Of a stretch of DNA of 64,000 nucleotides, positions 4,589 to 42,347 are shown piece after piece. The notes below the pieces were generated by a model. It was not told the origin of the DNA. It ran no database searches and saw only the letters and a program-made list of their open reading frames with translations. The stretch spans positions 53,940,001 through 54,004,000 of the forward strand of contig CM060732.1 in NCBI GenBank assembly GCA_030704615.1, written 5' to 3'. Source of the DNA: Takakia lepidozioides. Taxonomy: Eukaryota > Plantae > Bryophyta. Made by a program: the position numbers and the translations under genes. The stretch's first letter is position 1. Every line of letters starts with the position of its first letter.

Positions 4589-4600
4589 GTCTCATGTCTT

Positions 4601-5302
4601 TCATATCTTTAATGAGGCAATAACCAAAACTCTCTTCTGTAGTATCTCTCGTATATGCCTGGATTTCTTTCAAGCTTCAATGCACCTTTGGCTATACTAG
4701 AAGTCTTCGTTACCATAAAACCATATGGCAATTAAGTCTGAAAAGCTGTTCTTGGTGTGAGTTTGATCCACAGAATATCCTTAGGAATCCAATTCTTTAC
4801 CATTACAAGCTCTTCATGCATATGAGTGTAAACATTCACTTTCCTTTCCTCCCAGCCTTCAAACTCTACTCGCTTAATGGATAGCAATGCTATCACATAA
4901 ACCAGTGTTGGTAACCAACGCTCTTCCTCTACAGGCCACTTGATAAATCTTTATCACTCCTTTTTCCAGACCCCACTCAGGGTCAGCATCATGCACTCTC
5001 TTAAGAATGTTTTCTTTACAACCGTCGGGCAATTCCAAGAACCTCTGAAAGAATTGTTTGGACAATCTTTCATTCTCAGTTCCACAGGGAATTTGATTCA
5101 CATTAAATTCTTTAATTCTCCAACCACCATGATCCCACCAGATGCATGTCACATTTGGTTGTTCATGACCCAGTTCCCTAGTATGGTCGTCAAATGTCGA
5201 GCGGCTTTTACTCACCCATCCTTTCGCTATCCGAGGTGGAAACTCCAAGATAGAAGAGTTGGATATCTCTAAGCACTCAGCTCGCTCAGAACAATCAGTC
5301 AT
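4601..5302 (-). pseudogene. extra ORF upstream of gag, unknown function
   Basis: 142-aa ORF 4874-5302 continues after a frameshift as KRVEFEGWEERKVNVYTHMHEEL... to ~4601, with stops explicable by C>T changes. Confidence 0.5.
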
Positions 5303-6071: not shown

Positions 6072-8051
6072 AGGCAGAGCACACTTAAGCAAGAATACGC
6101 TTCGCAATTGGAGCCAATGTTCTTGCTCCAGCTCCAATCAGATCCCACCTTCATGTGGCAAGATATGAGCTCTTTGGATCCGGCATGTCCTCAAAAGGGT
6201 CGCGGCGATCTGAGAAGCATTGGTACTCGGATATAGCTCTCTCTGCATGGTTCGGCGGAGCCAGTCGCATGAGCACTCGCACGAGGCTGGCCTTGGCATC
6301 AGCGTCGTCTCGGAGCATGGTATTGTCGAGCAAGAATGGATTGAGCAGAGCCCCCGCATAATGCAAGTCCGTTCGAACCATCGAACGACGGTCGTAAAAT
6401 GCATCATCAGCACTGTCCGCAAGTTCAGGTTCCATGGAGAAGGGAGGATGCCTCAAGGATTGGACGTGCTTTTCAAGATTTTGCATAAGTTATCATGTTT
6501 TGCCCATTACTTACTGGTTTGCTTTCCATCAAACTCCCGCACAAGACGATTAACACCGGCTCTACCATATAAACAAAGTTTTCACATTTCTTCCAGTAAT
6601 CATCTTGCGAATGTTATTTTGAACTTTTCGACTTTTGCCCAATGACTTGGTTTTTCTAGAGTCCCGCAATGTCCATGTATACGCATCCCATTGAGGATTG
6701 ATGATGGTGTGCTCCAGACTGCTCTTCACCGTCACCAACCAATCCACGATCAAGAAGTCAGTGGCAAAACGAGTTTCGCCTGGATTGCGAACGCTGTATT
6801 TGGGTTCGTGCCTCCTATATATTGTCAAAGGGATGTGGTGTGTGCGGATGAACGACACAACAGTCTTCGCTCGCTTGACAAGTGTTTCATTCCACCCACT
6901 GTTCTTTTTCCCAATCTTCCAAAAGGATGTCAAGGATATGAGAAACACAACCTTGATAGTACATATGAGGATAACGTGCCAACAACATGTTTGCAGTGTT
7001 TCTCATGTTAGCGACATTGTCTATGCATATTTGCACGATTCTATCACTTCCGACCTATTCGATGAAGTCAATCAATAGTTGGCATTGATAACGTCCATTT
7101 TTCTTCTCGCCGCTAGTGTCGACCAATCCCAAGAATTGTTCCCCAGCTGGACATACGAGCATGACATTGAACAACGGTCTGTCTGTAACAGAACTCCAAC
7201 CATCGGCACATATAGTGCTTCTATATTTTCTGATGCACTCGCTCGTCCTATCGTTGACCTTTTGGGTAAGCTCAGTCATGTCGTCTTCTAGCAATCCTAT
7301 GCGGAGATTGTGATAAGTCGGAGGCACGTACGTGATGCCATGACCGAGCTTAACCCATAAAGTCAACGATAGGACGGGCGAGTGCATCAGAAAATATGGA
7401 AGCACTATATATGCCGATGGTTGGAGTTATGTTACAAACAGACCGTTGTTCAATGTCATGCTCGTATGTCCAGCTGGGGAACAATTCTTGGGATCGGTCG
7501 ACACTAGCGGCGAGAAGAAAAATAGACGTTATCAATGCCGGAAGCCTTGCCACATTAAATAGTATGTTGGCCTCGAAGAAAAACTCCGTCCATTTTTTAT
7601 CCAACTGTCTTTTTGCAGACAAGTTAATACCTTCCTACATGGATTGTTGCCGTAATCATCTACTCCGTTGAAGTATAAGGTTACAAAGAGGTGTTGAAGC
7701 AGGTTTTGCTCCGGCACAACCCACTTGTCCAAGGACACCCGAAGCCTCACAAAAGTCGCCCTAGGTACTAATCGGGGCATCTCGACGGGAAGATGGAGTG
7801 TTCTGCTCAGAGGTCATGTACATTGGAATATTGCCTTCACACTGGGCAAAGTGGCTTTTTACCCGCATAGATGCTTTAGGGCATAAACCCATCCCAGCGC
7901 TCTTCACACCTTTATAGCCGAGGTGGGCAAACAACCGATCCTTATGATAAGAAAGCTTTAATCCGCATAGGTTACACTCAACACTACCAGTGGCACTGAC
8001 AGTGTTTGGGATTGTCGTATACCAAGGGTTCCATTCCTCCCTCATCTTCAC
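6072..8051 (-). pseudogene. hAT transposase copy A (BED finger, DUF659/RNase H-like core), truncated in the dimerization domain
   Basis: CNLC..H..C BED-like finger, FFFEANILFN, TICADGWS, NPGETRFATDF, LHYAGALLNP; ends at RILAQVCSAL where the gypsy sequence begins. Confidence 0.9.
7081..7539. repeat. inverted duplication (hairpin) inside hAT copy A, arms ~7081-7286 and ~7334-7539
   Basis: 7346-7539 is the near reverse complement of 7081-7273; the peptide ALITSIFLLAASVD.SQELFPSWTYEHDIEQRSVCN appears on both strands. Confidence 0.9.
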
Positions 8052-14832: not shown

Positions 14833-17800
14833 TGTCGCGCACCTCACTTCGGTAAGCTCCCCTTCAAGTCATAGTTACTCGCTTTGATGCGCGCGCCTGA
14901 CTCCCAACCTGGCCGCGGGCCAACTTGGAGCTTCGGCTGCTCACCGGGACATAACGGTCCCCCTTCGCTTCCCTCTAAACCCTCCACCTATTTGGACTAG
15001 GAGAATTCCCTTTGGTAGATGGCAGTCCGGAACAGCTCCCCACTCTTTGGTCGCTTTCCGGCTCGCTCGCTTACTCACTAGTTTTTGGTCACCAACGGGC
15101 TTGCACCGTTCTCGGGTTACTACTCCCTATATATACTTCTGTAGCTGTCCGCGGGGGTTTCACAACCAGCCATGCCATTTTATGGCGAACCACCACGAAA
15201 ACCCTCGACTCCCGGTGAGTCGCGGTGAGTCTTGGCCCACTCACCACGGCCCCTATGGACCGTGATGAGTCCCAAGACTCCCCACGACTCCCACCACGAG
15301 GTCTCCGCCCCATGGTGAGTCCTATGCCACCCCCACTAAGTCCCGCTAAGCTACCACCACCCCTTGTGGAGCCACCCCCACCGCAACCCGGTGTGCGGGG
15401 CTCCACCTAGTGAGCGCCTCCGCCTCCTGAGTGCCTTGGGCACTCAAGGGTGCTTCAGCCCCCCATACCTATCGCTGCCGCTGCCCCCACCACAGGGGCA
15501 GCCCCTCATGTGTCCCGACCCCCTGCCCTCAAGGCAAAGGGCCGCACACACCCCTACCAACAGGGAGTCGATGTCCTCATCGACTTGTCCATTTTGTAGA
15601 AACGAACATCCAAGTTGTGGCGTCCCACATCAAGGAGTTTGTTTCCGTACCATGGCGTCCCATGGCAAAGAACCAAACCCCACACTTGACTACTCTCCAC
15701 TAGCTAGTTCGGCGACTTCCTCCAAGTCCCGGCCAAGGGTGGAGCCTCTCCAGCTCCTCCCAGTGCACTCTTCTTGGCCTACTTCAAGGCCAAGGAACGA
15801 TCCTCCCCGAGGATCGAATCGCCTTACTGCAACAACATTGCTTGCGATCGCTCATGATGCCGCTTTTGGCATCACCTTGAGCAAGGGTTCACCTGGAACC
15901 CTCTTTGACTAGGAAGATAACCTTGAACCAACCGTGCGCCCCAATCACTACAATTGGGTCCGCCTTGGAATGCTGGCCTGAGGTACGGGAACACGCCGAA
16001 GCCGCACTACGACTTCGTCCCGAGGCTACACGATTATAGTACGTGAACGGAAGCACGTAGCTTCCGCGTTAGCCCGCACTACAAGGCAACCCCCTCGGTA
16101 GCGCAGTTATAGTACGCGCACGCGCCAGGTGCGCACTAGCACGTGAACTCCCAAGAAGGCGCAAGTTTCCTTGCCCCTTGGATGGGGGTCACCCGATTTC
16201 GGCACTACGCAAACACACGATTAACCCAATTTACCTCTCCCACTTTTATAAGCTAGCATGCATTCTACACACTAGCCAACCATACCATGCATCACCATTC
16301 CAAACAAAATAGGACGCACAATTTGGAACCCATTTCCTTTATAACAAATTTTTGTACAATACAAGTTTTTGCAATCGGATTCCTAAGCTAGCTAACCGGG
16401 CTAAGCACACCTCCCCCACGCTCCAAGGTTGATGTCCCCATCAACGCGCTTTTGAGGTCGCCCTTCGAAAGCTGCAACCGCCTCGGATGCGTTTTCCCAT
16501 TTCTGAGGCACGCACCCAAGATGCCTCCACATGATGATAGCCCTTCCATTTGACGAGATACTCCGTTTCTCGGTTCTTGAACCTCCTCGACTTAAGTATT
16601 GCCTCCACCTCGTACTCAGGTTCATTTTCATGATCCAACAGCATAGGTGGCGGACGCAACACTTGATGCCGATTCGGACGCGCTTCATCTTTTGAAGTAA
16701 GGCTTCAAAAGGGAGACATGGAATACTGGGCACCTTGCTGTTTGCCGGCAGCTCCAATTCATACACATCCTCATTCATAACCTTCCGAATGCGAAAGGGT
16801 CCCGCATACGGAGGTACGAACTTCGGACTCACTTCCGGAGGTAGTCGGAAATTCTTGATGTTCAACCAGACCTCTGTGCCTGCCTCAAACTTCACTTCCC
16901 TCCGCTTCCGATTCGCCTGCCTTTCATACCGTTTCCTAGCTTTGGCAATGTTGTACTTTGCGAGCTTCAACAAACGCTCGCGTTCTTCCAGTACCGCCGC
17001 TACTGCCGGTTCCTCAACGTCCTGGGCGGCCCAACTTGTCGGCACCAGAGGTGCTTTTCCATAGACCAATACGAAAGGGGAAACTCCCGTTGCGGAGTGT
17101 TCTGTGTTATTATAACAGAACTCTGCCGCGTCTAAGTGTTCCATCCAGTCTGATTGGTCTGCCGACACGTAATTCCGCAAGAATTGCTTCACTACGGAAT
17201 TCACTCTTTTCCGTTTGGCCGTCCGTCGTAGGTCGGAAGGCGGTGCTCATCTTCAGCCTCGTCCCCATCTTCTTCCAAAGTGTCCTCCAAAATTTACTCG
17301 TAAACTTTGGATCGCGGTCCGAGACAATATCCTTCGGGACTCCATGATGCTTTAAGACGTGGGCGAAGTAAAGTCGCCCTGTCTCCTGCGCCGTTGCCGT
17401 CTCCTTGGTGGGGATGAAATGGCCCATTTTACTGAACCTATCCACCACCATGATTGCATCGAATCCTTTTGACAGCGCATAGCAGTCATGAAATCCATCG
17501 AGACGCTTTCCCAAGTCCCCTCTGGAATCGGCAAGGGTTGTAACAGCCCCGCTTGCTTTTTGTACTCGCTCCGGTTTTGTTGGCATGTGGTGCATGTCTT
17601 GACATACTCCTCTGCCTCCTCCCTCAGTTTGGGCCAGAAATACTCTTTCTTCAAGAGTGCCGCAGTGCGCTTGGCTCCGCCGTGGCCCGCAAGCGGGCTA
17701 TCATGGCATTCTCTCAAGAGGCTATCTCTGATCCCTCCCTTCGGCACGTAGAGACGTTTTTTGCTTATACCGGAGCAGTCCATTTTGCAAGTGGAACTGC

Positions 17801-20800
17801 GATTTAACCCCCATCCTCAAGTCCTGCATCACGGACTTTGCCAGCTCATCCTTCCGGCAAGCCTTCCGGATCTTCCTTTGGAGCGCCGTCTCGCCCTTGT
17901 ACACCAACAAGAGCTGCTGCTTTCTACTTAAAGCATCGGCCACCACATTGTCCGTCCCGGTTTGTACTGGATATCCACGTCGAACACCGCCAAAGTATCT
18001 TGCCACCTAAGTTGTTTTGGGGACAACTTGGGCTGCGTGGCAAAATACTTCACCGTGACATTGTCCGTGAACACCTTCACTGGGTTGGAACCAACATAGT
18101 GGCGCCAAGCTCAAGGCAATGCACCACCGCCTTCATCTCTTTTCGTGCGTCGTCGGCCACCGTCGCTCCACTTCATTCAGTTTCTTACTTTCGTAAGCCA
18201 CTGGACGTCCATCTTGCATAAGTACACCCCCAATCGCGAAGTCCGATGCATCTGTATGAATCTCAAACGGACGATCGAACTCCGGGATTTTCAAGACTGG
18301 AGCTTCCGCCATCCGCTGCTTCAATTCAGCAAAAGCTTGGCCACAAAATGTGTTCCATACCCAGACTTTGGATTTACACAGAAGGTCCGACAGCGGCCCC
18401 GCGATCTTTGGCGAAATTTCTCACATACTTCCGGTAATAGGAGGCGAGTCCTAGGAAGGATCGCACTCCCGGGACCGAAGTCGGAGGCTCCCAGTCCAAG
18501 ATCGCCCTCACCTTTCTGTCATCCATTTTGATCCCATCCTGTGTAATCACATGCCCCAGAACTCCACTTTTGTGACCCCGAATTCGCACTTTGAAGCTTT
18601 GGCATACAGCTTCCCTTCCCGCAATTTTTGGAACACCCTTTTGAGGTGCTCCAGGTGCTCCTCCTTTGTTTTCGAGTACACCAAGATGTCGTCGATGTAC
18701 ACGATCACAAAGTCATCCAACCACTCCTGGAAAAGGCTGTTCATCAGCGTGCTAAATGTCGCTGGTGCATTGGTGAGCCCAAAAGGCATCACCAAGAACT
18801 CATATGAACCATACCTTGTCCTGCACGCGGTCTTCTCCTCATCTCCTTCCGCCACCCGAATTTGGTGATAGCCGGAGCGCAAGTCGATCCGGCCAACCGA
18901 TCGAAGAGGTCGTCGATCCTTGGCAAAGGGTACCGGTTTTTGATAGTCACCTTATTCAGAGCCCTGTAATCGACACACATCCGCAGCGTCCCATCCTTCT
19001 TGTCTGCAAATAGCACCGGGGCTCCGTAAGGTGACTTACTCGGCCGGATGTACCCCTTTGACATTAGATCCTTGAGCTGAGTCTTCAGCTCGACCAACTC
19101 TCTGTGGCTCAACCGGTAGGGCGCCTTGGCAGGCGGTTCCGATCCCGGTATCACCTCAATCTTGTGGTCAACTCCTCTTCGCGGTGGCAAGCCGCTTGGT
19201 AAATCCTCCGCATCACATCCTGGTATTTCTCCAAAATCCCCTTGATCCAATCTGGGCTCGGCTCCCCATCGCCTTCTCCTTTCACTTCTCTAATGTAAAG
19301 CAAAACTGGGGCTCGTGTGCCTCCTCCACGGCCCACTCCTTTGCTGACAGAAGGTTTATTCGCCCTCCCACGGATTTGGGCGTTTCCGACACTCGTAAAA
19401 CCTCGCCACCATTCCCACATGGCAGCGTGACTACTCTCTTGCGGCCATCTATGACCGCTCCGGATTTGCTCAAAAAGGTCATCCCCAAAATGAGATCCAC
19501 TCCATCGATCTCGCAGATGGTGAAGTTCTCACGTCCCTCCCAACTCCCCAGTTGAAGAGGAACATCAAACGCCAACCTTGTCGCCAACTGTGGTTCTCCT
19601 TTGGCAGAACGCACCTCAATAGAGGCCCCCACGTCACTTGTCGGGAGTCCCAGCTTTTGTGCCGTTGCCGGTGTCATGAAGGAGTGCGACGCTCCTGTGT
19701 CCACCAACAACGACACATTAGTTCCGGATATTATCCCATCCACGAACAATAACTGACTCCCTTTTCGTAAGGCGCCAGTTTCCTGATACAACTCACAAAA
19801 ATTTGCCTACCTTGCAAGTCCTGGCGACCACCGCTTCCACCAAGCGACTGATGGTATCTTCCGACAGCTCCGTGGTCGCCCGAGTCATGTTCAATTGCCG
19901 GGGCTTCGTGCACTTCTTGGCCATGTGCCCGGGCTCCCCGCAATTGAAACACACTCCATCAAAGGTCGCCTTCTGTCCGCCATAAGCCGCTCCACCCGCT
20001 TTTTTCCTTTCGAAGCACCGGGTGCCGCCTTGACGTGTGAAGGCCCTCCCTTCGATTTCCACGTGCCATTTCGCCGCGTGGCCTATCCCACTTCTTTTCC
20101 GGTCGGAAGGAGTCACCTTCCCGCCGGTCTTCTTGTGGTTCAGCTCCGTACGGCCTTGTCTTTCACCCCTAGGGACATCCGAGAAACATTCAGCCCTCTC
20201 AATTGCCTCGTTCAAAGTCTTGGGTGGCTTCTCCTCCAACTTCCGCCTGGCCCATGGGGCCAGTCCCGCCACAAAGTTGAAGACCATTTCTGGTTCTGCC
20301 ATGTCCGCGACTTCGAGCAACAGCACATTGAAAGCCTGGACATACCCCCGAATGTCATCTGTTTGCTTCAAATTCCTCATCTTGTCCCGGCAAGCCAGGA
20401 CGCGTTGAGGGGCACAAACTGTCTCTTCATCAATTCCTTGAACCCACTCCAGTTCAAGGTTTCCGGGCTTGGACCTCGGTCGTGAAGGCGTTTCTGCCAC
20501 CATTGTTGAGCATAGCCCCTCAAATAGGTGGGAGCCACTTCCACCCGATCCTCGTCACTCAACTTGGCCGCCCGGAAGTACTGCTCTAGCTCCAAGAGCC
20601 AGGTGTTGAGTGCCTTCCGATTTCGGACGCCCTCGAAGGTGCCGGGTTCCTTAGGCTTCACCTTAAACTTTGCCTTAGTGGAAGTGGCATTAGCCGCCTT
20701 CAACACGTCTTTCAACGTCCCGCCAAACTGCGCCAACAACCCTTCCCAAAAGGCTGCCGGCATGGGAGGCATCTCTTGGTTTGTCGGAGCTCTCAAGGAT

Positions 20801-21808: not shown

Positions 21809-24800
21809 AGTGTCGTTGTTGGTGGACACAGGAGCGTCGCACTCCTTCATGAAAAGTTGGGACTCCCGACAAGTGACGTGGGGCCTCTATTGAGGTGCGT
21901 TCTGCCAAAGGAGAGTTGGCGTTTGATGTTCCTCTTCAACTGGGAGTTGGGAGGGACGTGAGAACTTCACCATCTGCGAGATCGATGGAGTGGATCTCAT
22001 TTGGGGATGACCTTTTTGAGCAAATCCGGAGCGGTCATAGATGGCCGCAAGAGAGTAGTCACGCAATGGTGGCGAGGTCTTACGAGTGTCGGAAACGCCC
22101 AAATCCGTGGGAGGGCGAATAAACCTTCTGTCAGCAAGGAGTGGGCCGTGGAGAGGCACACGAGGCTTTACATTAGAGAAGTGAAGGAGAAGGCATTGGA
22201 TCAAGGGGATTTTGGAGAAATACCAGGATGTGATGCCGGAGGATTTACCAAGCGGCTTGCCACCGCGAAGAGGAGTTGACCACAAGATTGAGGTGATACC
22301 GGGATCGGAACCGCCTGCCAAGGCGCCCTACCGGTTGAGCTTGGTCGAGCTGAAGACTCAGCTCAAGGATCTAATGTCAAAGGGGTACATCCGGCCGAGT
22401 AAGTCACCTTACGGAGCCCCGGTGCTATTCGCAGACAAGAAGGATGGGACGCTGCGGATGTGTGTCGATTACAGGGCTCTGAATAAGGTGACTATCAAAA
22501 ACCGGTACCCTTTGCCAAGGATCGACGACCTCTTCGATCGGTTGGCAGGAGCCAGCCGGATCGACTTGCGCTCCGGCTCATCAAATTCGGGTGGCGGAAG
22601 GAGATGAGGAGAAGACCGCGTGCAGGACAAGGTATGGTTCATATGAGTTCTTGGTGATGCCTTTTGGGCTCACCAATGCACCTTTAGCACGCTGATGAAC
22701 AGCCTTTTCAGGAGTGGTTGGATGACTTTGTGATCGTGTACATCGACGACATCTTGGTGTACTCGAAAACAAAGGAGCACCTGGAGCACCTCAAAAGGGT
22801 GTTCCAAAAATTGCGGAAGGGAAGCTGTATGCCAAAGCTTCAAAGTGCGAATTCGGGGTCACAAAAGTGGAGTTCTGGGGCATGTGATTACACAGGATGG
22901 GATCAAAATGGATGACAGAAAGGTGAGGGCGATCTTGGACTGGGAGCCTCCGACTTCGGTCCCGGGAGTGCGATCCTTCCTAGGACTCGCCTCCTATTAC
23001 CGGAAGTATGTGAGAAATTTCGCCAAGATCGCGGGGCCGCTGTCAACCTTCTGTGTAAATCCAAAGTCTGGGTATGGAACCTTTTGTGGCCAAGCTTTTG
23101 CTGAATTGAAGCAGCGGATGGCGGAAGCTCCAGTCTTGAAAATCCCGGAGTTCGATCGTCCGTTTGAGATTCATACAGATGCGTCGGACTTCGCGATTGG
23201 GGGTGTACTGATGCAAGATGGACGTCCAGTGGCTTACGAAAGTAAGAAACTGAATGAAGTGGAGCGACGGTGGCCGACGCACGAAAAGAGATGAAGGCGG
23301 TGGTGCATTGTCTTGAGCTTTGGCGCCACTATGTTGGTTCCAACCCAGTGAAGGTGTTCACGGACAATGTCACGGTGAAGTATTTTGCCACGCAGCCCAA
23401 GTTGTCCCCAAAACAACTTAGGTGGCAAGATACTTTGGCGGTGTTCGACGTGGATATCCAGTACAAACCGGGACGGGACAATGTGGTGGCCGATGCTTTA
23501 AGTAGAAAGCAGCAGCTCTTGTTGGTGTACAAGGGCGAGACGGCGCTCCAAAGGAAGATCCGGAAGGCTTGCCGGAAGGATGAGCTGGCGAAGTCCGTGA
23601 TGCAGGACTTGAGGATGGGGGTTAAATCGCAGTTCCACTTGCAAAATGGACTGCTCCGGTATAAGCAAAAACGTCTCTACGTGCCGAAGGGAGGGATCAG
23701 AGATAGCCTCTTGAGAGAATGCCATGATAGCCCGCTTGCGGGCCACGGCGGAGCCAAGCGCACTGCGGCACTCTTGAAGAAAGAGTATTTCTGGCCCAAA
23801 CTGAGGGAGGAGGCAGAGGAGTATGTCAAGACATGCACCACATGCCAACAAAACCGGAGCGAGTACAAAAAGCAAGCGGGGCTGTTACAACCCTTGCCGA
23901 TTCCAGAGGGGACTTGGAAAGCGTCTCGATGGATTTCATGACTGCTATGCCGCTGTCAAAAGGATTCGATGCAATCATGGTGGTGGTGGATAGGTTCAGT
24001 AAAATGGGCCATTTCATCCCCACCAAGGAGACGGCAACGGCGCAGGAGACAGGGCGACTTTACTTTCGCCCACGTCTTAAAGCATCATGGAGTCCCGAAG
24101 GATATTGTCTCGGACCGCGATCCAAAGTTTACGAGTAAATTTTGGAGGCACTTTGGAAGAAGATGGGGACGAGGCTGAAGATGAGCACCGCCTTCCGACC
24201 TACGACCGACGGCCAAACGGAAAGAGTGAATTCCGTAGTGAAGCAGATCTTGCGGAATTACGTGTCGGCAGACCAATCAGACTGGGTGGAACACTTAGAC
24301 GCGCAGAGTTCTGTTATAATAACACAGAACACTCCGCAACGGGAGTTTCCCCTTTCGTATTGGTCTATGGAAAAGCACCTCTGGTGCCGACAAGTTGGGC
24401 CGCCCAGGACGTTGAGGAACCGGCAGTAGCGGCGGTACTGGAAGAACGCGAGCGTTTGTTGAAGCTCGCAAAGTACAACATTGCCAAAGCTAGGAAACGG
24501 TATGAAAGGCAGGCGAATCGGAAGCGGAGGGAAGTGAAGTTTGAGGCAGGCACAGAGGTCTGGTTGAACATCAAGAATTTCCGACTACCTCCGGAAGTGA
24601 GTCCGAAGTTCGTACCTCCGTATGCGGACCCTTTCGCATTCGGAAGGTTATGAATGAGGATGTGTATGAATTGGAGCTGCCGGCAAACAGCAAGGTGCAC
24701 CCAGTATTCCATGTCTCCCTTTTGAAGCCTTACTTCAAAGATGAAGCGCGTCCGAATCGGCATCAAGTGTTGCGTCCGCCACCTATGCTGTTGGATCATG

Positions 24801-26613: not shown

Positions 26614-27633
26614 ATCGTGGTGGTGGATATGATTAGTAAAATGGGCCATGTCATTTCCACCAAAGAGACGGCAACGGAACAGGAGACGGGACGACTTTAC
26701 TTCGCCCACATCTTCAAGGATCATGGACTCCCGAAGGATATTGTCTCCGACCGCAATCCAAAGTTTACAAGTAAATTTTGGAGAGCACTTTGGAAGAAAA
26801 TGGGGACGAGGCTCAAGATGAGCACCGCCTTCTGACCTACGACGGACGGCCAAATAGAAAGAGTGAATTCCGTGGTGAAGCAGATCTTGCGGAATTATGT
26901 GTTGGCAAACCAATCGGACTGGGTGGAACACTTGGATGCGGCAGAGTTCTGTTATAATAACACAAAACACTCCGCAATGGGAGTTTCCCCTTTTGTATTG
27001 GTCTATGGAAAAGCACCTCTGGTGCCGACAAGTTGGGCCGCCTAGGACGTTGAGGAACCGGCAGCAGCGGCAGTGCTGGAAGAACACGAGCGTTTATTGG
27101 AACTCGCAAAGTACAACATTGCCAAAGCTAGGAAACGGTATGAACGGCAGGCAAATCAGAAGCGGATGGAAGTTAAGTTTGAGGCAGGCACGGAGGTCTG
27201 GTTGAACATCAAGAATTTTCGACTACCTCCGGAAGTGAGTCCGAAGTTTGTACCTCCGTATGCGGGGCCCTTTCCCATCCAGAAGGTTATGAATAAAGAT
27301 GTGTATGAATTGGAGCTGTCGGCAAACAACAAGGTGCATCCGGTATTCCACGTCTCCCTTTTGAAGCCTTACTTCAAAGATGAAGCGCGTCCGAATCGGC
27401 ATCAAGTGTTGTGTCCGCCACCTATGCTGTTGGATCATGAAAATGAACTTGAGTACGAGGTGGAGGCAGTGCTTAAGTCGAGGAGATTCAAGAATCGAGA
27501 AACGGAGTATCTCGTGAAATGGAAGGGCTATCATCAAGTGGAGGCAACTTGGGTGCATGCCTCAGAAATAGGAAACGCATCCAAGGCGGTTGCAGCTTTC
27601 GAAGGGCGACCTCAAAAGCGGAAGAAGCGTTGA
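26614..27633 (+). pseudogene. integrase C-terminal half plus chromodomain of element Z
   Basis: IVSDRNPKF, GPF, VHPVFHVSLLKPY, EYEVEAVL..YLVKWKGY..ATW; in-frame stops at ~26833 and ~27043. Confidence 0.9.
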
Positions 27634-33161: not shown

Positions 33162-33758
33162 AGATAATGGGAATAATGCAAGAACTTAATGCACACGTGC
33201 AACCTCTGACAACGATGGTACGCCGGTTTCTGGCATGTCAAATCTTCCCCACCCTCTCTTGAGACTGACATGGAACTGAAGGAGTGTAAACTCCATCAGG
33301 GTTATACGATGAGGTGTGTAACTTTACTTGGGGTTACACGACGAGGTGTGTAACTCCACTTGGGGTTACATGGAATGGAGTGTAACTCCACTCAATGTAA
33401 CTCACCCTTGGTCTCGAAATTTGACTAAGTCCAAAATGGACTAATGAGAGTTACATGGGCCAAGGTTACAGAGGGTTACACCAATTAGAAAACTAAAACC
33501 AGGTTATACTACAAGAGCCTCCCATCAAGAATCAAACCCGGATATTCACCACCTGCAATGCTATCACCTTACCATCACGCTACCCACCACAACATGAAAC
33601 CCTCTAGGATTCTTACGTATTCAATAGGGGAACCGAGGGGGTGGGGAGGATTTGACAGGGGCCCAACAAGGGCCGGAGGAGCCCAAGCTGCCAGAATCCT
33701 TCGAAAGTACCATCAGATTTTACGCGTGCATTAAGTTCTTACATTATTCCTATTGTCT
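33162..33758. mobile_element. fold-back/MITE-like element with ~90-bp imperfect terminal inverted repeats
   Basis: gataatgggaataatgcaagaacttaatgcacacgtg..tgtcaaatcttccccaccctctc is inverted against gagggggtggggaggatttgaca..cgcgtgcattaagttcttacattattcctattgtc. Confidence 0.65.
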
Positions 33759-34039
33759 CATAATTAAATATCAATAAAATCAATCAAATTCATATTGAAA
33801 ATGAAATGAGTATCAACACCGTCAAAAGAATTATTACTGGAAAAAGGCAAAACAATGCATAAAATGAAGAATCCTAGGAATAATGTAAGCGTGTGATCTC
33901 TGACAAATCAGTAGGCCAGTTTCCAGCATATTGAACCTTTCCCACCCTCTCTTGAAAGTGACATGGAACTCATTGGAGTATAATTTCAGTCCAGGTGACA
34001 GTAGGTACAAAGAGAGGGAGTGTAAACTCGAGTTGGGGT

Positions 34040-35161: not shown

Positions 35162-35511
35162 CAGTGTTGGGCGGTTATTTGATTTTTTTCATAACCGGCG
35201 GTTCCGCTAGCTTCAAAAAATTTAAAACTATTAATCTGCGGTTGCGGTTATTAAATTTTTTATGGCTAGATATAACCTGCCGGTTACGGTTACTTGCAAA
35301 AACGTCAAATAACATGTGGTTTTCATCAAATAACCGAGGGTATTGGGCGGTTCTTTAGAGGTTTTAGCTCGGTTATTTGAATGCGTGACCTCCGCCGGTT
35401 CCTAACTGGACTGGTTACTTCATTTTTTCACCTCCGCCAGTCATATACACATATAACCGGATAGGTAACCGCCGGGTATTAGATAGAAATTTAAATAACC
35501 GCCCAACATTG
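35162..35511. mobile_element. hAT-type MITE
   Basis: TIR CAGTGTTGGGCGGTTATT / AATAACCGCCCAACATTG; 8-bp TSD GTGGGTAC (35154-35161, 35512-35519); internal (A)ACCG/CGGTT motifs. Confidence 0.93.
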
Positions 35512-36171
35512 GTGGGTACCTTGGGATTTAGAGTCATTGCAAGGGAAGTTTTGGCCAATCGCATTAGTAGGTGGCCACCAGTCACCTTCTAAATGGAAGG
35601 CAATAGCCTGAAGTAACATACCTGTAGTTGACCTAAGACGGAAGACATTTATTGTTGACATTTTATGCACCTGTTCATTACGTTTTTCATACGGTTTCGT
35701 AGGTACCTTGTTGTTAGTTAGGACAGATAGGTAGATCGATCAAAGGGGGTTGTTTCTCCCTGCACTCTCAGTGTATATATACTTTACATGAAGTTGCTAC
35801 AACATCGATTTCAAGACTGCTCTTGTATAGTTTACTGTTTGTGTCTACATGGTATCAGAGCAAGGCTGCCCAGACTCGTGAGCTTGAGCTCTGAGAATAT
35901 TGCATGTTCACCATTTGAGAAAGTTGTCAGTGAGCTTAGCTCCTGGAATATTGTACGTTGTCATTTAGAGAGTGTCATTTGGAGAGCGGGTTCAACTCAT
36001 CCATTGTAGTTTCTGGAGGGCCTGATGATACTCCAACACTAAATCTACAGTTCCCCATAGTGCAGATTGAGCATACATGCCTGTAATTATACTCACAGGA
36101 CGAAGGTTGGGAGCATGGAACCTCAAATTGGAGGTCAGAAATCGATCACAACAAGAGAGAAGGATGCTTAC

Positions 36172-36304
36172 GATCGAGGCTCGTGGTCAGCTTGTAGATA
36201 AGGGCAAGAGTGACACCGAAGCCAACCACGAAAGGCCAGTTCCTCCGCGCCTCAGATAATGCCACCTCCAACACCGGCCTCCCTACCACTGGCGTGGGAG
36301 CCAT
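36172..36304 (-). pseudogene. captured exon 1 of a gene resembling the plant mitochondrial ATP synthase 6-kDa subunit
   Basis: MAPTPVVGRPVLEVALSEARRNWPFVVGFGVTLALIYKLTTSLD followed by the donor GTAAGC; resembles the recalled plant motif WKRxWPFLxGFAVTGxLITKLTAGL. Confidence 0.75.
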
Positions 36305-36670
36305 GGCCGCTTCTTCTCTCACCACAACTGAACCCTTGCAAACACACAATACTCTCTGCCATGGCGATGGCGATCCTCTCAAACCCTCTCCTCCCTTCTT
36401 GCACCTTCGCAAACCTTCCTTTATTTCTCCTGCTTAACCCCTAAAGGACTAACCCCAAATTTTGGGTCCACCCCCAAAAAATTGACCCGTCCCCTCTTCT
36501 CACAAAGTTCACCACATTTCTTCTGTCTTTTCTTGTTGCTTGCTATTCAATTCTTCCACTGTAGTTTTTCTGATCACGAAGGTCACAACCTTCCTTCTAT
36601 TTTTTTTTTTTCTTGTTTCTTGTTTCTTTGGTGGGATCATTTTATTTTGTTCCTGTCACATTTCTTCGTT

Positions 36671-39600
36671 ATGACGAGTCAAGACGTCAAGACCCAGTTT
36701 CTGAGATCAACAAATTAAGTGGGCCACTGAACTATTCCACTTGGAAGTTCAAGATCAAGAACATCCTCCTTCGAGAGGATATTTGAGATATTGTTGCTCA
36801 TCTCACCCCTATCAGGATCATTGATCCAAACAATGTTCAACAGGTTGAGGAACTTCGAAAGCTGAGAGTCAAGGCTCTCACGACTCTAAATCTGTCTGTG
36901 AAAGACCACATCATGCCTTCCATTGCTGCTTTCAATGACCCCAAAGAAAGCTGGAGGTTTCTTGCTGATCTCTACATGGTTCCAAACAACGCCACCAGAT
37001 TAATGCTGAAGGATAAACTCACCACGATCAAGTTGGGAAACTGTACTAATGTGGTTGAGTATCTGCAGAAAATTCAAGAAATACAGTTCGAGCTTGCAGG
37101 TATTGGAGAAGCTATGGATGAGCGAGACTTAGTCAAGAGAGTACTCAACACCCTTCCCGACAGCTTTGGAGGGGTACTGCAGACCTTCAATGGAAACATG
37201 CAACTTCCAACATTTGCCGAGGTCTCCGCAAGACTGATGCAAGAAGAAGGATGATTGGCATTTCGGGCCAAGAACATGAGTAACAGTGAGAGTGCAGAAG
37301 CCCTAATGGTGAGAATGCGAAACCCATCGACGTATCACCATCCAAATTACCAGGGACGGCGTTTCCTCCACACCGAATGTGGTGGTTTCCAATCTCAACA
37401 TAGTGAGGATCATGCACGAGGTGGATTTCGACCTAGAGTCATAGGTCCTTATAATTTTTGTGGAGAGCTTGGCCACCTGATGAGAAGTTGCCTTGAACTC
37501 GCACGCGAAATGGCCAAGAGGGCACGTGAGCGTCGTGACAGTCACCGACCTCCACAAGCCAACGTCATGGAAGAAGGAGGAGCTCCCTTCATTGATAATG
37601 AGAAAACATCATTGGATCTTTTTGAATGTGGCATTAATGCTCTGGAGTTAGAATCTAAATGGTTTCTTGATTCAGGTGCTACCAAGCACGTAGGCAAAGA
37701 AAAAGATGCCTTGGCAGACTTAGAATTCTGCGAGCACCCATCTTATGTTAAATCTGCCGGAGGAGAAAGTCTTGCCATTGAGGGCAAAGGGTCTGTCAAC
37801 ATTTCCACTGCCACAGGCAAAATAAAAGTTGACGAAGTTCTTTATATCCCTGATTGCACAAAGAATCTACTGTCCGTTGGGAGACTGACAGACACAGGCA
37901 TAAGCCTAGTCTTTGATAGCAAGAAGTGTTTGCTCATTCAAAAGCCTTCTTACAACATCATTGGCCAAGGAATCCGAGATCCCAAGAATGGACTTTACAA
38001 GATTAAAGGGACAGATTCTGCCTCCATATCGACACCCTTGGTTTGCTCGATCGAAGGGATGTCTAACCCGTCATGGTTGTGGCACCGAAGACTAGGGCAT
38101 CTCCATCCACAAAGTGTGCACTTTCTTTCCACCCGAGGCTTGGCAACAGGGATTCCTCTAATCCGTTTGCAGGCACCAGTCTGCCAGGGATGCATGGAGG
38201 GCAAGCAACATCGAGAGCGTGCACCCAAGACTGCAACTCACATAGCAACACAGATCTTGGAGCTGGTGCACTCAGACTTATGCGGTCCACATTCCACTTC
38301 ACACGGTGGAGCTCATTTTTTCATCACGTTCATTGATGACTTCAACAGAAAAGGGTGGGTGTACTTCCTAACACACAAATCACAAGCATTTACGTTCTTC
38401 AAGAAGTTCAAGGCACTCGTAGAAAATGCCACTGGAAAGAAAATTCAATGCTTGAGAAGTGATAGAGGAGGGGAGTATCTCTTTGATGAATTTCAATCAT
38501 ATCTTGACCAAGCTGGAATCAAGAGACAACTCACCCAGTCCTACACATCACACCAAAATGGGATTGCTGAACATTGATGGAAAAAGCTCGAGCCATGGTC
38601 TATGAGACCGAGATCCCAAGGCATCTCTAGGCGGAGGCGCTTAGCACGGCCAACCTGCTTACGAACCTCTCACCAACGAGAGCCAATCAGGGCACTACAC
38701 CAGATGAGAGATTCTCTGGCCAAAAACCAGATTTGAGCAAATTGAGGATTTTTGGAAGCGTTGCTTATGTGCACATTGCAGATGAAAAACGGAGGAAGCT
38801 TGACTCGAAATCTTTACGCTGCGTCTTTGTAGGCTACGATGCAGAAACCAAGGGTTTACGATGCTACCATCCATCATCGAGGAAATCCTTATCAACAAGG
38901 ATGTACGCCTGGATGAAGATGTATTCTTTTACTCAAGAAAAAAACCATCAGACCTTCATGATGCTGAGGGTGATCCTCCTCGTGATGAAACCCAGGTTGA
39001 TGCTGCCCAAGACGTGCCACATGAAGTCTCGAGGATCAAACATCGAAGCACACATGCAGTTCTAATTTGGTTGGTGGACTATCAAGTTTTGTATCGCACG
39101 TTACAAGTAAGAATTCTATCTATCGACTTGCTGAATACGATCCACCTGTTGGCTCGAGTTTGCATGACGATCATACAGTTGTGACCTCAACGTCACCGCC
39201 AATTCAGCATCCGAGCCTCCAATGGATCATCCCCCTGTAGACTCCAACCTACCTCTACATGCACCATCATCCTATACAGGTGACCCTGTCCATTCTCCTC
39301 CGTGCATCACATATTCAAGAGCACCATCCACTAGACTTTTAGTTTTCAACGTTGAAATTGAACATGATTTCCTTGATGAGCTAGTCAATTTTTCTGATGC
39401 GGCTTCTAACCCTGGATGGGTTCGTGCTATGGAAGAGGAGATGACTTCCATCTCTCAGAACCAGACCTGGTCCCTCACAGATTTACCTCCAGGGAAACGA
39501 CCTATTCATTCCAAGTGGGTTTACAAAGTGAAAGCTGGTTTTGATGGTCAACCTATCAAACTTAAGGCAAGGCTAGTAGCAAAAGGATATGAACAACAAG

Positions 39601-40947
39601 CAGGTATTGATTATGATGAGACATTTGCCCCGGTTGCAAAATGGAGTACAATTCGCAGCATGGTGGCTCTTGCAGCTAGCAATGATTGGGATGTTCTTCA
39701 TATGTATATCAAGACCACATTCCTCAATGGGGACTTGAAGGAGGATGTGTACATCATCCAACCTCAAGGATGTGAAGTCGCCGGCTGTGAACACAAGGTC
39801 TGTAAACTCCACAAGGCTTTATGGCCTGAAGCAGGCATCCTGCGCATGGTATGAGAAAATTGATACTTTCCTGCATGAACAAGGTATGACAAATTGCCAA
39901 TCTGATCCAAATTTATACTACATATTTGAAGACGGGAAAATCTTGATCATGGTCATTTACGTAGATGATCTCTTCATCACTAGGAATCATTCTTTGAAGA
40001 TCAAGTGGCTACGTGACCAACTATCCAAGAGATTTGCCATATCCCTACTAGGTCACCTCAATTTATACCTAGGAGTGGAGTTTTTGCATCGACCTTACGG
40101 CATCATAATGTCTTACAAAAGGTTCATTTTTAATTGCCTTGATGATTTAGGTCTTGCAGAATGTTATCCTTCACCCGTTCCTCTCTCAGAAGGGACTAAG
40201 CTTTCCCTCGACATGTCTGCACCCCTTGTGGATCCCACTGAATATCGGTGCATGGTATGGAAACTCTTACACATTACCCATATTCGTCCAGATATATCCT
40301 ACGCTGTGGGACTTGTTTCACGCTATATGCAGGCTCCCCAACGTCCCCATTCTGATGCTGCCAAGCACATCTCCCGCTATCTAAAAGGGACTCAGAATCT
40401 GGCCATCTGTTATCGAAGGGGGGAAGCGCCCAATTCTTGTGGCTTTGTCGATACTGACTATGCTGGAGATTTGGATGGTCGCAAATCCACCACCGGGTAC
40501 ATTTTCACCCTTGGAAATGGACCCATATCATGGAGCAGCAAGAAACAAGGATGTGTGGCAAGGTCCTCAACAAAAGCTGAATACATGGCTTTGTCTGAGG
40601 CGGCATGCGAAGCTATTTGGCTATGAAGATCATTCAACGAGATTAAGGTACGAGATGATGCACCCATGCTCATCAATTGTGATAACCAGAGTTCCATCAA
40701 GATGGCCCTCAACTCAATGTTCCACAATCGAACGAAACATATTGACGTTGCCCATCATTTCATTCGAGAGACTCAAAAAGATGGGAAAACTGAGCTTGCA
40801 TACATTCCAACAAAGGAACAGATGGCAGACATCTTGACAAAACCCTTGGGTCGCATTCAGTTTACAAAACTCAGGGAAAAGTTAAGTATGGTGGATTTGT
40901 CAGTGGCACCTAATAGTCCTGGAACGTATCTGAATTCTTTGGGCTGA
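36671..40947 (+). pseudogene. copia gag-pol polyprotein, disrupted
   Basis: NYSTWKFKI gag, WFLDSGATKH protease, WLWHRRLGH, ELVHSDLCGP/LRSDRGGEY integrase, KARLVAKGY/YVDDL RT, DTDYAGD/RTKHID RNase H; several stops and frameshifts. Confidence 0.93.
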
Positions 40948-42347
40948 CAAGCTGCCAATTCAACAGCGTCGAATTCCTTTTATGTCTGGACATTGCATTC
41001 TAGTGGTGTGCCACAGTCACAAAGTCCCTCCGGGATTATACTGACTTGGCACATGCAACCTAAAGGAGTCACGGCAGTTGGACCTTTCAGCCATGGCCAG
41101 ATTTTGATCTTCAACTACTTGATTAGGAAGACCAGGAAGTGGAGACACAGGGGGGTATGTGATTCCTTCAGGATGCAATGATGTCAGGTACAAGGGGGGG
41201 TGTTGACATTTTATGCACATGTTCATTACGTTTTTCATACGTTTTCGTAGGTACCTTGTAGTTAGTTAGGACAGGTAGGTAGATCGATCAAAGGGGGTTG
41301 TTTCTCCCTGCACTCTCAGTGTATATATACTTTACATGAAGCTGCTACAACATCGATTTCAAGACTGCTCTTGTATAGTTACTGTTTGTGTCTACATTTA
41401 TATGCATATATAGTGGACTTTTTGGAAACTGTATCAGGAAACTGACTCAGGGTCTCAATCACACAGTCCAAATTGATACACCCATTGAACAATAGATGGA
41501 CGTCATCGTCCTACAATGTGCCTTGAAGTTGGCGATTTTCGGGATGAAAACATCATATATGGGACGATCTTCCCAAGTTTATGGAAGAAAATCACTTTTC
41601 TCATTGTCGCATTCGCTTCCTGTATATTTCAAAAGAAATCTTTAGAGAAACCCTTATTTCAGAGTGATAAAGATGGAAGCTAGCTGCAAGACACTAACTA
41701 CCTCATGACCAGTTTCTTCTTGCAATTTAATTTAAATTTGTACAAGAAAATTGTCATGTATTAATCATGAATGATGCAACAACAACAAATCGATGATTAT
41801 GATCGTGACTAGTGATCAAAGGCCCAGCTTCAATATTTTGAAAATGACCACTACGAGTAGTTTAGTTTGATGTCAATAGATGAACATTAAAATTTGAAAT
41901 AGAACATAACACTATATTACAATGTTATAAGACCCTTGTCTTTGGTTGGTAAAATTATCTAAGAAGACAACCATTTGTCTATCTTACAATAACCTGCATA
42001 ATTTGAGATTACTTTGTGAAGGTGTCCATCATGTTTAGATATATGCTCAAATCATACTAACTATATCACATTGTAATTGGTATATTATTTGCAAGCTGGA
42101 AAGGAATATCTACCTTCATCAAATTGCATGTAAGTCTGATTTCACATTGGTGAGTGGGAGGTTTTCCCAACATTGGGACAATGTAATTGTGGCAGCTTTG
42201 CATTCCCTTTCAGTTTACACATAATCCACTGTGGTAAATGTGGCACTCATGAAGCTAACTTAAAAATAAACAAACTTTGGATTTGTTTGTGTGTTGTTTG
42301 CACAATCAAAAGGTTCAAAGAAGCTGGACCTATGTGATGATTGATTA

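What the first reader, a model, noticed from the sequence alone, without database searches (positions are those of the whole stretch)
36000..36500. Copia retrotransposon carries an antisense host exon plus intron start (ATP synthase 6-kDa subunit-like) in its 5' leader
Seen: between the PBS (35850) and gag (~36671), and inside matched LTRs and TSD, the minus strand holds ATG 36304, 44 clean codons, a GTAAGC splice donor at 36171, and 5'UTR-like sequence upstream. No second exon is visible. Knowledge: the peptide RRNWPFVVGFGVTLALIYKLTTSL resembles the plant mitochondrial F1Fo 6-kDa subunit. Inference: this is transduplication that kept an intron. Sense-strand capture from spliced mRNA is what retroelements are expected to do, so antisense capture with intron implies a DNA-level or antisense-transcript template. 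LTR-driven transcripts would be antisense to a housekeeping gene, or the captured promoter could transcribe against the element.
Basis: partly seen in the sequence, partly recalled or inferred. Interest (0 to 1): 0.8.

Follow-up and report, generated by a model that had tools for sequence, protein, structure and literature searches.

The report
Host gene piece inside a copia element
A decayed copia jumping gene in a bryophyte genome carries, backwards in its untranslated leader, a 482-base unspliced piece (upstream region, first exon, start of the intron) of the gene for the small 6-kDa subunit of mitochondrial ATP synthase. This is a real and cleanly bounded example of a retrotransposon picking up a host gene fragment, which is a known phenomenon.

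Summary
A Ty1/copia element lies at 35653-41396, with 197/196-nt LTRs about 97% alike, the target-site duplication TTTAT, a tRNA-Met-type primer-binding site and a polypurine tract. Its leader holds a 482-nt foreign segment (36013-36494) on the minus strand. That segment contains 189 nt of upstream sequence, an intact 44-codon first exon (36304-36172), a GTAAGC donor, and 159 nt of intron.

A profile search links the exon to proteins named "Mitochondrial ATP synthase 6 kDa subunit". The Sphagnum orthologue has a phase-1 intron at the same codon. In probable RNA runs of the same organism, contigs match the exon and then continue, exactly at 36172, into sequence encoding the family's second exon, so a spliced parent gene exists. 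A DNA contig from a sister copia about 85% alike has 3 nt where the segment sits, so the segment is an insertion.

No second exon, flanking duplication, inverted ends or poly(A) was found, and there is no evidence of expression. I favour DNA-level break repair with copied-in filler (about 55%) over template switching during reverse transcription (about 30%).

Gene-fragment capture by LTR retrotransposons is well documented. Unchecked notes of this scan list other antisense host fragments in retrotransposon leaders of this genome, and a second copia/6-kDa locus 19.85 Mb away. Interest is low to moderate.

The parts
35648..35652 (.). Target-site duplication TTTAT, left copy
   Evidence: Sequence read directly. 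Identical to 41397-41401.
35653..35849 (+). 5' LTR (197 nt, TG...CA)
   Evidence: Repeat finder, alignment, and count: 5 mismatches and 1 indel against the 3' LTR.
35850..35861 (+). Primer-binding site TGGTATCAGAGC (initiator tRNA-Met type)
   Evidence: The assignment to the tRNA rests on general knowledge of copia elements.
35862..36012 (+). Copia leader, part 1, shared with the sister copy
   Evidence: table 8: sister contig record 1 lies on 35817-36012.
36013..36494 (-). Foreign segment of 482 nt: an unspliced fragment of an ATP synthase 6-kDa subunit gene, antisense to the element
   Evidence: joint 36012>36608 with 36 letters in between. One search aligns 33 of those letters to 36495-36527, which leaves 3 nt in the sister where the window has 36013-36494.
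36013..36171 (-). First 159 nt of intron 1, beginning with the donor GTAAGC at 36171-36166
   Evidence: Another genomic locus (contig record 17) shares this stretch from 36016 and runs on beyond it.
36172..36304 (-). Exon 1: ATG plus 44 codons and the first base of a split codon. It encodes the whole transmembrane segment of the 6-kDa subunit.
   Evidence: Splice junction at 36172 shown by the contigs of the probable RNA runs and the translation.
36305..36433 (-). 129 nt upstream of the ATG (5'UTR and/or promoter of the donor gene). It holds an out-of-frame upstream ATG at 36362.
   Evidence: The function of this stretch is inferred, not shown.
36434..36493 (.). 60-nt piece of a dispersed repeat at the far end of the captured segment
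   Evidence: summed depth is about 5 to 10 times that of neighbouring bins, many contigs have different flanks at 36434, and the piece also lies inside a 1.3-kb contig of the probable RNA runs.
36495..36670 (+). Copia leader, part 2
   Evidence: the sister resumes at 36495, and it lacks 36528-36607.
36671..40947 (+). Degenerate gag-pol (gag, protease-like barrel, integrase, reverse transcriptase, RNase H) with frameshifts and stops
   Evidence: ORF list, Pfam, three-frame translation. The 8-bp tandem duplication at 36679-36694 is absent from a sister contig (table 4).
41192..41200 (+). Polypurine tract AAGGGGGGG
41201..41396 (+). 3' LTR (196 nt)
41397..41401 (.). Target-site duplication TTTAT, right copy

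Best explanation
A low-copy Ty1/copia retrotransposon, now decayed, carries in its 5' leader a 482-nt passenger. The passenger was copied from a genomic, unspliced copy of the host's mitochondrial ATP synthase 6-kDa subunit gene: about 189 nt upstream, exon 1, and the first 159 nt of intron 1. It lies antisense to the element.

Shown: the fragment's family, its exon-intron boundary, the existence of a spliced parent in the same organism, and the absence of the fragment from a sister copia.

Inferred mechanism (my commitment, about 55%): a chromosomal copia copy suffered a break in its leader. The break was repaired with 'filler' DNA copied from a 6-kDa gene locus. This explains three things: the piece contains upstream and intron sequence, its ends fall at arbitrary points, and the copia sequence continues almost seamlessly on both sides.

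The chimeric copy then probably went through at least one further round of retrotransposition. The intron stub would survive that round because, being antisense, it is not a splice substrate in the element's RNA.

The passenger most likely has no function. It lacks exon 2 and sits in a dead element, and nothing shows that it is expressed.

The confidence given (0.8) is for what the thing is, a captured and probably inert genomic-type fragment. The DNA-level route alone stands at about 0.55.
For: - Element anatomy.
- Family identity: one search gives 79% identity to a Sphagnum protein at E 1.6e-13. One search gives 145 profile hits. One search gives the names 'Mitochondrial ATP synthase 6 kDa subunit' and 'ATP synthase small subunit 6, mitochondrial'.
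- Conserved intron place: searches show that Sphagnum exon 1 ends ...GAC C|GTAAG with an intron of about 1 kb. Read-through products of many bryophyte gene models end in D-R-K/E.
- Spliced parent in the same organism: records 18 and 21 match 36172-36231 and 36172-36241 at about 88-90%. Both have a loose end at 36172 that translates in frame to PADAQKSSFV, against the family's P-x-x-AQKSPF.
- The segment is an insertion, not ancestral: joint 36012>36608, together.
- Another genomic locus runs past the left breakpoint (record 17), as expected if the source intron is longer than the captured part.
- Clean insertion: only 3 nt differ at the site in the sister. There is no flanking duplication, no inverted ends, and no poly(A).
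- Capture is probably older than this integration. The insert differs from the parent mRNA by 7 of 60-70 nt and from record 17 by about 9%, whereas the two LTRs differ by 3% (Fisher p 0.02-0.06).
Against: - The donor locus itself was not seen. Only 60-70 nt of the parent mRNA and one damaged paralogue could be compared, so the age argument is weak.
- The sister copy is only about 85% alike and has a further 80-nt gap nearby, so 'seamless' is accurate to a few bases at best.
- The position in the 5' leader would be a roughly 6% chance for a random break in the element. Unchecked notes of this scan report many antisense host fragments in retrotransposon leaders of this genome, which points to a replication-linked (RNA-level) process.
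- Contigs cannot give copy number, so it is not shown that a second copia copy carries the same junctions.
Confidence: 0.8

Rival explanations
1. RNA-level capture inside the virus-like particle. Reverse transcriptase left the copia template in the leader, copied a co-packaged host RNA, and switched back. Two versions are possible. In the first, the switch happens during plus-strand DNA synthesis onto a sense, unspliced (or intron-retaining) 6-kDa transcript, running to its 5' end. In the second, it happens during minus-strand synthesis onto an antisense or read-through RNA that crosses the intron, exon 1 and upstream region.
For: - This is the textbook route for LTR-element capture (PMC5131818, PMC13317346).
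- The fragment lies in the leader and is antisense, like other captured host fragments noted by this scan in this genome (unchecked leads).
- The order intron, exon 1, upstream on the + strand is what copying a sense pre-mRNA from within the intron to its 5' end would give.
- Another note reports a copia LTR next to a 6-kDa exon 19.85 Mb away. That would fit a read-through intermediate.
Against: - Published LTR, TRIM and Bs1 captures are spliced, exon-only pieces (10.1101/010850).
- Double template switches usually replace element sequence rather than returning within about 3 nt of the departure point (PMC5131818).
- An out-of-frame upstream ATG at 36362 and a repeat piece at 36434-36493 suggest that part of the segment lies upstream of the mature transcript. 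This is a weak argument.
- No supporting transcript was seen.
Confidence: 0.3
2. The segment entered this particular chromosomal copy after it had integrated, and was never retrotransposed. On this view it is a private, in-situ insertion.
For: - No second copy with the same junctions was shown.
- The window holds no sister copy.
- The protein collection holds no contig of this organism that could be checked.
Against: - The insert differs from its known relatives by about 9-12%, against 3% between the LTRs.
- Summed contig depth over the exon corresponds to several loci, and a second sequence variant covers 36290. The meaning of both observations is uncertain.
Confidence: 0.25
3. The segment is a separate mobile element that already carried the exon and then jumped into the copia leader. 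Candidates are a MITE or Pack-type DNA transposon, a Helitron, or a SINE-like retroposon.
For: Its right end is a 60-nt dispersed repeat, and another locus shares sequence up to within 3 nt of its left end.
Against: - There is no flanking duplication, no terminal inverted repeat (best arm match 9 nt), no Helitron ends, no terminal poly(A), and no tRNA or Rfam match.
- Only the right 60 nt is high-copy.
- Any relative of the insert must stop matching the window at the copia junctions, so the shared boundaries are expected anyway.
Confidence: 0.05
4. The chimera is functional. Either LTR-driven transcripts or small RNAs antisense to the exon regulate the parent gene, or the captured upstream region drives a 52-residue variant of the 6-kDa protein with a new tail.
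For: - The exon is intact, keeps all residues invariant in the family alignment, and encodes the whole transmembrane segment.
- Read into the intron, it gives a 52-residue ORF.
- Small-RNA effects of captured fragments on donor genes have been proposed in maize and gymnosperms (PMC2773423, PMC13477047).
Against: - None of the contigs of the two probable RNA runs matches this copy at 99% or more.
- The element is degenerate.
- Forty-four codons staying open over about 10% divergence is not unusual.
Confidence: 0.07

Closest known systems
Gene-fragment acquisition by plant LTR retrotransposons (maize Bs1; 20 LTR elements with gene-fragment insertions in a 22-Mb maize region, PMC2773423; rice and sorghum surveys cited in PMC13317346)
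   Same: A host gene fragment lies between the LTRs of an otherwise ordinary element. The element has matched LTRs and a target-site duplication, and the fragment is incomplete and probably inert.
   Different: Bs1 and TRIM captures are described as spliced, exon-only pieces (10.1101/010850). This one keeps upstream sequence and an intron start, is antisense, and is added to the element rather than replacing part of it.
LTR-mediated retroposition by double template switch in virus-like particles (PMC5131818)
   Same: The product is a chimera of an LTR element and a partial host gene that can be retrotransposed again.
   Different: That model uses spliced mRNA, replaces internal element sequence, and shows microsimilarity at the junctions. 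Here the piece is unspliced, the element is continuous to within about 3 nt, and I could not establish junction microsimilarity because the donor was not seen.
Filler-DNA insertion during double-strand-break repair (capture of genomic or reverse-transcribed sequences at breaks, e.g. PMC4516963; in plants, from general knowledge)
   Same: An ectopic stretch of a few hundred bases with arbitrary ends and either orientation is inserted with minimal loss at the break and without a target-site duplication.
   Different: Here the break would lie inside a retrotransposon that then probably moved again. The repair event itself cannot be shown from sequence.
Read-through transduction by the Rider retrotransposon at the tomato SUN locus (summarised in PMC13317346)
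   Same: An LTR retrotransposon moves genomic-type sequence.
   Different: Transduced sequence lies outside or next to the LTR of the source copy, as a flank. Here the piece is internal, between the primer-binding site and gag.
Pack-MULE, Pack-CACTA and Helitron capture (PMC13317346, 10.1101/010850)
   Same: The captured piece contains exon plus intron and non-coding flank, as is usual for DNA-level capture.
   Different: The carrier is a copia retrotransposon. No features of a DNA transposon bound the piece.

Membership tests
Mitochondrial ATP synthase 6-kDa subunit (plant 'small subunit 6') gene family: the captured exon | Significant sequence similarity to named family members | tested here: met
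   A profile of the bryophyte relatives plus the window's exon hits 145 cluster representatives. These include Ceratopteris (3.6e-15), Papaver (7e-10) and Malus (6.8e-9) proteins named as this subunit. The window's peptide alone hits bryophyte members at E 1.6e-13. The Pfam hit ATP-synt_J is only weak (E 0.01, below cut-off), and no solved structure matches.
Mitochondrial ATP synthase 6-kDa subunit (plant 'small subunit 6') gene family: the captured exon | Conserved core R-N-W-P-F followed by a single hydrophobic helix | tested here: met
   Alignment A2: the window's exon keeps all 17 invariant columns. The window was itself a row of that alignment.
Mitochondrial ATP synthase 6-kDa subunit (plant 'small subunit 6') gene family: the captured exon | Phase-1 intron after the codon for D/K following S-L, then a short second exon (P-x-x-AQKSPF...) | tested here: met
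   The intron is at the same place in Sphagnum. Contigs of the probable RNA runs of the host splice exactly at 36172. The second exon itself is absent from the window, so this is a fragment and not a gene.
Mitochondrial ATP synthase 6-kDa subunit (plant 'small subunit 6') gene family: the captured exon | The protein is part of the ATP synthase complex | not testable with these tools
   The name is taken from database annotation. There is no biochemical evidence for the bryophyte protein.
Ty1/copia LTR retrotransposon: the carrier | Matched LTRs ending TG...CA, 5-bp target-site duplication, primer-binding site, polypurine tract | tested here: met
Ty1/copia LTR retrotransposon: the carrier | Domain order gag, protease, integrase, reverse transcriptase, RNase H (integrase before reverse transcriptase) | tested here: met
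   Pfam Retrotran_gag_2, gag_pre-integrs, rve and RVT_2, in that order. The reading frames are broken.
Gene-fragment capture by an LTR retrotransposon | The host-derived fragment lies inside the element's own boundaries | tested here: met
   36013-36494 lies between the primer-binding site and gag, within the LTR pair and target-site duplication.
Gene-fragment capture by an LTR retrotransposon | Related elements lack the fragment | tested here: met
   The sister contig in two DNA runs of one sample skips it. Only one such sister, about 85% alike, was seen.
Gene-fragment capture by an LTR retrotransposon | An intact parent gene exists elsewhere in the same genome | tested here: met
   Spliced contigs in two probable RNA runs of the same organism label. 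The genomic donor locus itself was not retrieved.
Gene-fragment capture by an LTR retrotransposon | The chimera was propagated (two or more copies with the same junctions) | tested here: inconclusive
   The divergence argument suggests it, but contigs cannot count copies. The locus 19.85 Mb away could not be read.
Bs1/TRIM-type RNA-mediated transduction of spliced mRNA | Captured sequence is exon-only (introns removed) and in the element's sense | tested here: not met
   The intron start and upstream sequence are retained, and the orientation is antisense. The criterion is taken from 10.1101/010850.
Nested DNA transposon, Helitron or retroposon carrying the exon | Own termini (inverted repeats, Helitron ends or poly(A)) and a target-site duplication at the segment's ends | tested here: not met
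   None was found. There is no tRNA-like or Rfam feature.

The most novel reading that the evidence does not exclude
The copia/6-kDa chimera is not an inert accident but part of a recurrent, possibly selected association. A second copia-linked 6-kDa exon lies 19.85 Mb away on the same chromosome. On this reading, the captured upstream region with its intact exon 1 yields a 52-residue membrane peptide with a new C-terminus. Alternatively, LTR-driven antisense RNA or small RNAs tune the dosage of a housekeeping ATP synthase subunit.
Probability: 0.06. Interest if true: 0.6.

Novelty: new member of a known kind. Interest (0 to 1): 0.3.

Why it matters
The case has unusually sharp boundaries: exact insert limits, an empty-site sister, and a parent splice junction resolved to the base. 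A captured piece that is unspliced, antisense and seamlessly inserted argues that not all captures by LTR retrotransposons pass through spliced mRNA in the particle. Some may arise by DNA repair in a chromosomal copy and then be spread by retrotransposition.

If the whole genome is searched, this locus could help decide between these routes. It is also a warning for annotation. The intact first exon encodes three quarters of a 58-residue protein and can easily be called as a gene. Many database relatives are such exon-1 read-through models. Beyond that it is an ordinary by-product of transposon activity.

Tried and rejected
**Searches that found nothing**
- Second exon in the window: tblastn with full-length relatives at E up to 10 found none near the element. 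The only weak match (7738-7785, + strand, E 0.9, with a stop) is chance.
- Sister copia copies or other copies of the leader in the window: none.
- Exact-product look-ups of four ORFs of the window returned no records: two versions of the exon ORF, the gag ORF and the gag-integrase ORF.
- The word search with the gag ORF found a single relative at 70% identity.
- Pfam on full-length bryophyte relatives: no family.
- Solved structures by sequence and by profile: only chance matches.
- Rfam and tRNA scans of the leader: nothing.

**Leads not pursued or not usable**
- The protein atlas gave leads to UPF0640, subunit j, 6.8-kDa proteolipid and subunit k clusters. I did not pursue them once the profile search gave named 6-kDa members.
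- A findings search by sequence was blank, which means nothing here.
- One literature probe (PMC3726574) says nothing about introns or orientation.
- I found no paper describing an antisense capture by an LTR element that retains an intron. The search was limited to three word searches.

**Joined model**
- I translated the window's exon 1 joined to the 30 loose letters in a script only. The joined model was not sent to any search. Exon 1 was searched by reference alone.

Full report
**1. The carrier**

The window holds one complete Ty1/copia element at 35653-41396.
- Its LTRs (35653-35849 and 41201-41396) start with TG and end with CA. They differ by five mismatches and one single-base indel.
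- The 5-bp target-site duplication TTTAT flanks both ends (35648-35652 and 41397-41401).
- The primer-binding site TGGTATCAGAGC follows the 5' LTR at 35850-35861, and a purine run (41192-41200) precedes the 3' LTR.
- Pfam finds copia-type gag, the pre-integrase and integrase core domains, and RVT_2, in the copia order.
- The reading frame is broken several times. An 8-bp tandem duplication at 36679-36694 is absent from a sister contig, and there are in-frame stops.

The element is therefore a dead copy of a low-copy family. No other copy lies in the window.

**2. The observation**

On the minus strand an ATG at 36304 opens 44 codons that run to 36172. The next bases are GTAAGC.

The peptide matches small bryophyte proteins with E-values of 1.6e-13 to 1e-10 against 5.8 billion sequences. 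The best match is 79% identity to Sphagnum. Full-length relatives from Marchantia paleacea, Diphasiastrum, Mesotaenium and Sphagnum are 56-59 residues long. They continue after the equivalent of residue 44 with a short tail, P-x-x-AQKSPF(I/V)N-x-x-AH. Exon 1 thus encodes about three quarters of the protein, including the R-N-W-P-F motif and the only hydrophobic helix.

No match to that tail exists near the element.

**3. Which gene family**

The bryophyte relatives are all annotated as hypothetical. Pfam gives only a sub-threshold hit to ATP-synt_J for the window's peptide and nothing for the full-length relatives. No solved structure matches.

Because the family name is part of the claim, I ran the exhaustive profile search with alignment A2. 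It returned 145 cluster representatives at E up to 0.001. Most are flowering-plant proteins of about 55 residues that match profile positions 16-56.

The sources name several of them "Mitochondrial ATP synthase 6 kDa subunit" (Ceratopteris, Papaver) or "ATP synthase small subunit 6, mitochondrial-like" (Malus, Pyrus).

**4. The exon-intron boundary and the parent gene**

In the Sphagnum orthologue (locus L001), exon 1 ends ...CTC GAC C followed by GTAAG. An intron of about 1 kb follows, and exon 2 supplies the tail. The window reads ...CTC GAT C followed by GTAAGC, the same phase-1 position. Many bryophyte gene models that read through this boundary end in D-R-K or D-R-E, which is the translation of the same donor context.

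The strongest evidence comes from public runs labelled as the same organism. Two runs guessed to be RNA each hold a well-covered contig: record 18 (1059 nt) and record 21. These lie on 36172-36231 and 36172-36241 at about 88-90% identity. They then leave the window exactly at 36172.

The loose letters, read on the minus strand in frame with exon 1, give P-A-D-A-Q-K-S-S-F-V, which is the family's second exon. The host therefore has an expressed, spliced 6-kDa gene whose junction falls at the base where the window's copy turns into GTAAGC. I translated this join only in a script and did not send the joined model to any search.

**5. The fragment is an insertion with exact limits**

In two DNA runs of one sample, a 678-nt contig of a sister copia (about 85% alike) lies on 35817-36012 and on 36608-36965, with 36 letters in between. 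Thirty-three of those letters align to 36495-36527. The sister therefore has three bases where the window has 36013-36494, and it separately lacks 36528-36607.

The foreign segment is thus 482 nt. On the minus strand it consists of:
- a 60-nt piece of a dispersed repeat (36493-36434; summed depth is 5 to 10 times that of neighbouring bins, and many contigs have different flanks);
- 129 nt of upstream sequence with an out-of-frame ATG at 36362;
- exon 1;
- 159 nt of intron.

Its ends carry no target-site duplication, no inverted repeat, no Helitron-type termini and no poly(A). Nothing in it resembles a tRNA or an Rfam family.

Another single-copy genomic contig (record 17) shares 36016-36198 and 36291-36346 at about 91-93%. 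In it, 92 nt of the exon are replaced by 11 nt, and it runs on for over 400 nt beyond 36016. I read it as a damaged paralogue or the donor's relative whose intron continues past the captured part. Any relative of the insert must stop matching the window at the copia junction, so the shared boundary does not argue for a mobile unit.

**6. Timing**

The LTRs differ by about 3%. The insert differs from the parent mRNA by 7 of 60-70 nt and from record 17 by about 9% (Fisher p 0.02-0.06 for the mRNA comparison). If either is close to the donor, the capture is older than this copy's integration, and the chimera was retrotransposed with its passenger.

That would also explain why the intron stub persists: in the element's RNA it is antisense and cannot be spliced. 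This step is inferred. The true donor was not seen and contigs cannot count copies.

**7. Mechanism**

Three routes fit an antisense, unspliced piece.

- **(a) DNA-level.** A break in the leader of a chromosomal copy is repaired with filler copied from a 6-kDa locus. In favour: genomic-type content (upstream, exon, intron), arbitrary ends, and near-seamless continuity of the copia sequence. Double template switches usually replace element sequence (PMC5131818).
- **(b) RNA-level, plus-strand synthesis.** Reverse transcriptase switches onto a sense unspliced transcript and runs to its 5' end.
- **(c) RNA-level, minus-strand synthesis.** Reverse transcriptase switches onto an antisense or read-through RNA.

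In favour of (b) and (c) are the leader position and the recurrence of antisense host fragments in retrotransposon leaders of this genome. That recurrence comes from other notes of this scan, which I could not check and do not count as support.

I put (a) at about 55%, (b) plus (c) at about 30%, and other routes at 15%. Mapping the parent's transcription start and finding the donor would decide.

**8. Function**

Nothing indicates one. The two probable RNA runs hold no contig that matches this copy at 99% or more. What they hold over the insert comes from the parent and from record 17. One of the two (X5) also holds LTR-plus-flank and gag contigs of sister copies, which look like DNA carry-over or read-through. 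Antisense regulation or a 52-residue variant protein remain untested possibilities.

**9. Comparison with what is known**

- Bs1 in maize, and 20 such LTR elements in 22 Mb of maize (PMC2773423);
- reviews and surveys (PMC13317346, PMC13477047);
- the template-switch model (PMC5131818).

The described retroelement cases are typically spliced, exon-only pieces, in contrast to DNA-transposon captures that keep introns (10.1101/010850). This case departs from that pattern in three ways: it is unspliced, antisense, and added rather than replacing element sequence. The class is nonetheless known.

Within this genome the scan has noted similar cargo before on other DNA. This includes a second copia/6-kDa association 19.85 Mb away, which I could not read.

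**10. Verdict**

It is a new member of a known kind with a modestly unusual anatomy. Interest 0.3.

Noticed in passing
window 36434-36493: A 60-nt stretch at the far end of the captured segment is a dispersed repeat. Summed contig depth is about 5 to 10 times that of its neighbours, and many contigs have different flanks at 36434. It also lies inside a 1.3-kb contig present in both probable RNA runs, probably in an untranslated region of another gene. Its nature is unknown: no tRNA or Rfam match and no other copy in the window.
   Followed up: partly
window 35450-35640: The sequence just left of the copia is a very high-copy repeat. Summed depth is 2200-5000, against about 45-60 for single-copy contigs, and many contigs break at 35508-35513. 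The copia sits next to or inside another repeat.
   Followed up: no
window 36679-36694: An 8-bp tandem duplication (GTCAAGAC twice) shifts the gag frame eight codons after its ATG. One sister contig lacks the extra 8 bases (table 4).
   Followed up: partly
window 17144-17452, 23979-24280, 26616-26914; also 18154-18210 and 23220-23333: The same chance-level tblastn peptides recur at three and at two places, on both strands. The window therefore holds several copies of at least one other repeated element. One motif looks like a retroelement polymerase.
   Followed up: no
window 33218-33277 and 33911-33970: A 60-nt direct repeat, 82% alike and 693 nt apart, lies upstream of the copia.
   Followed up: no
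Same genome, 19,847,784 bases beyond the window's end (scan note s1-462699): Another first-stage note reports a copia LTR that supplies a new C-terminus and stop to an ATP synthase 6-kDa subunit gene. It may be the donor with a copia in intron 1, a second chimeric copy, or the damaged paralogue seen as contig record 17. It could not be read from here.
   Followed up: no
Protein database, relatives P0001, P0012, P0013, P0017-P0027 and others: Many database models of this tiny gene in bryophytes are exon-1 read-throughs into the intron (ending D-R-K or D-R-E and then unrelated residues) or fusions. The family is named in only a few species. The gene is systematically mis-annotated.
   Followed up: partly
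Sphagnum loci L001 and L002: In two Sphagnum assemblies the 6-kDa gene lies about 1.3 kb from a convergent ferredoxin-type (Fer2) gene. The deposited 73-residue model appears to run past the family's usual end (AHR).
   Followed up: no
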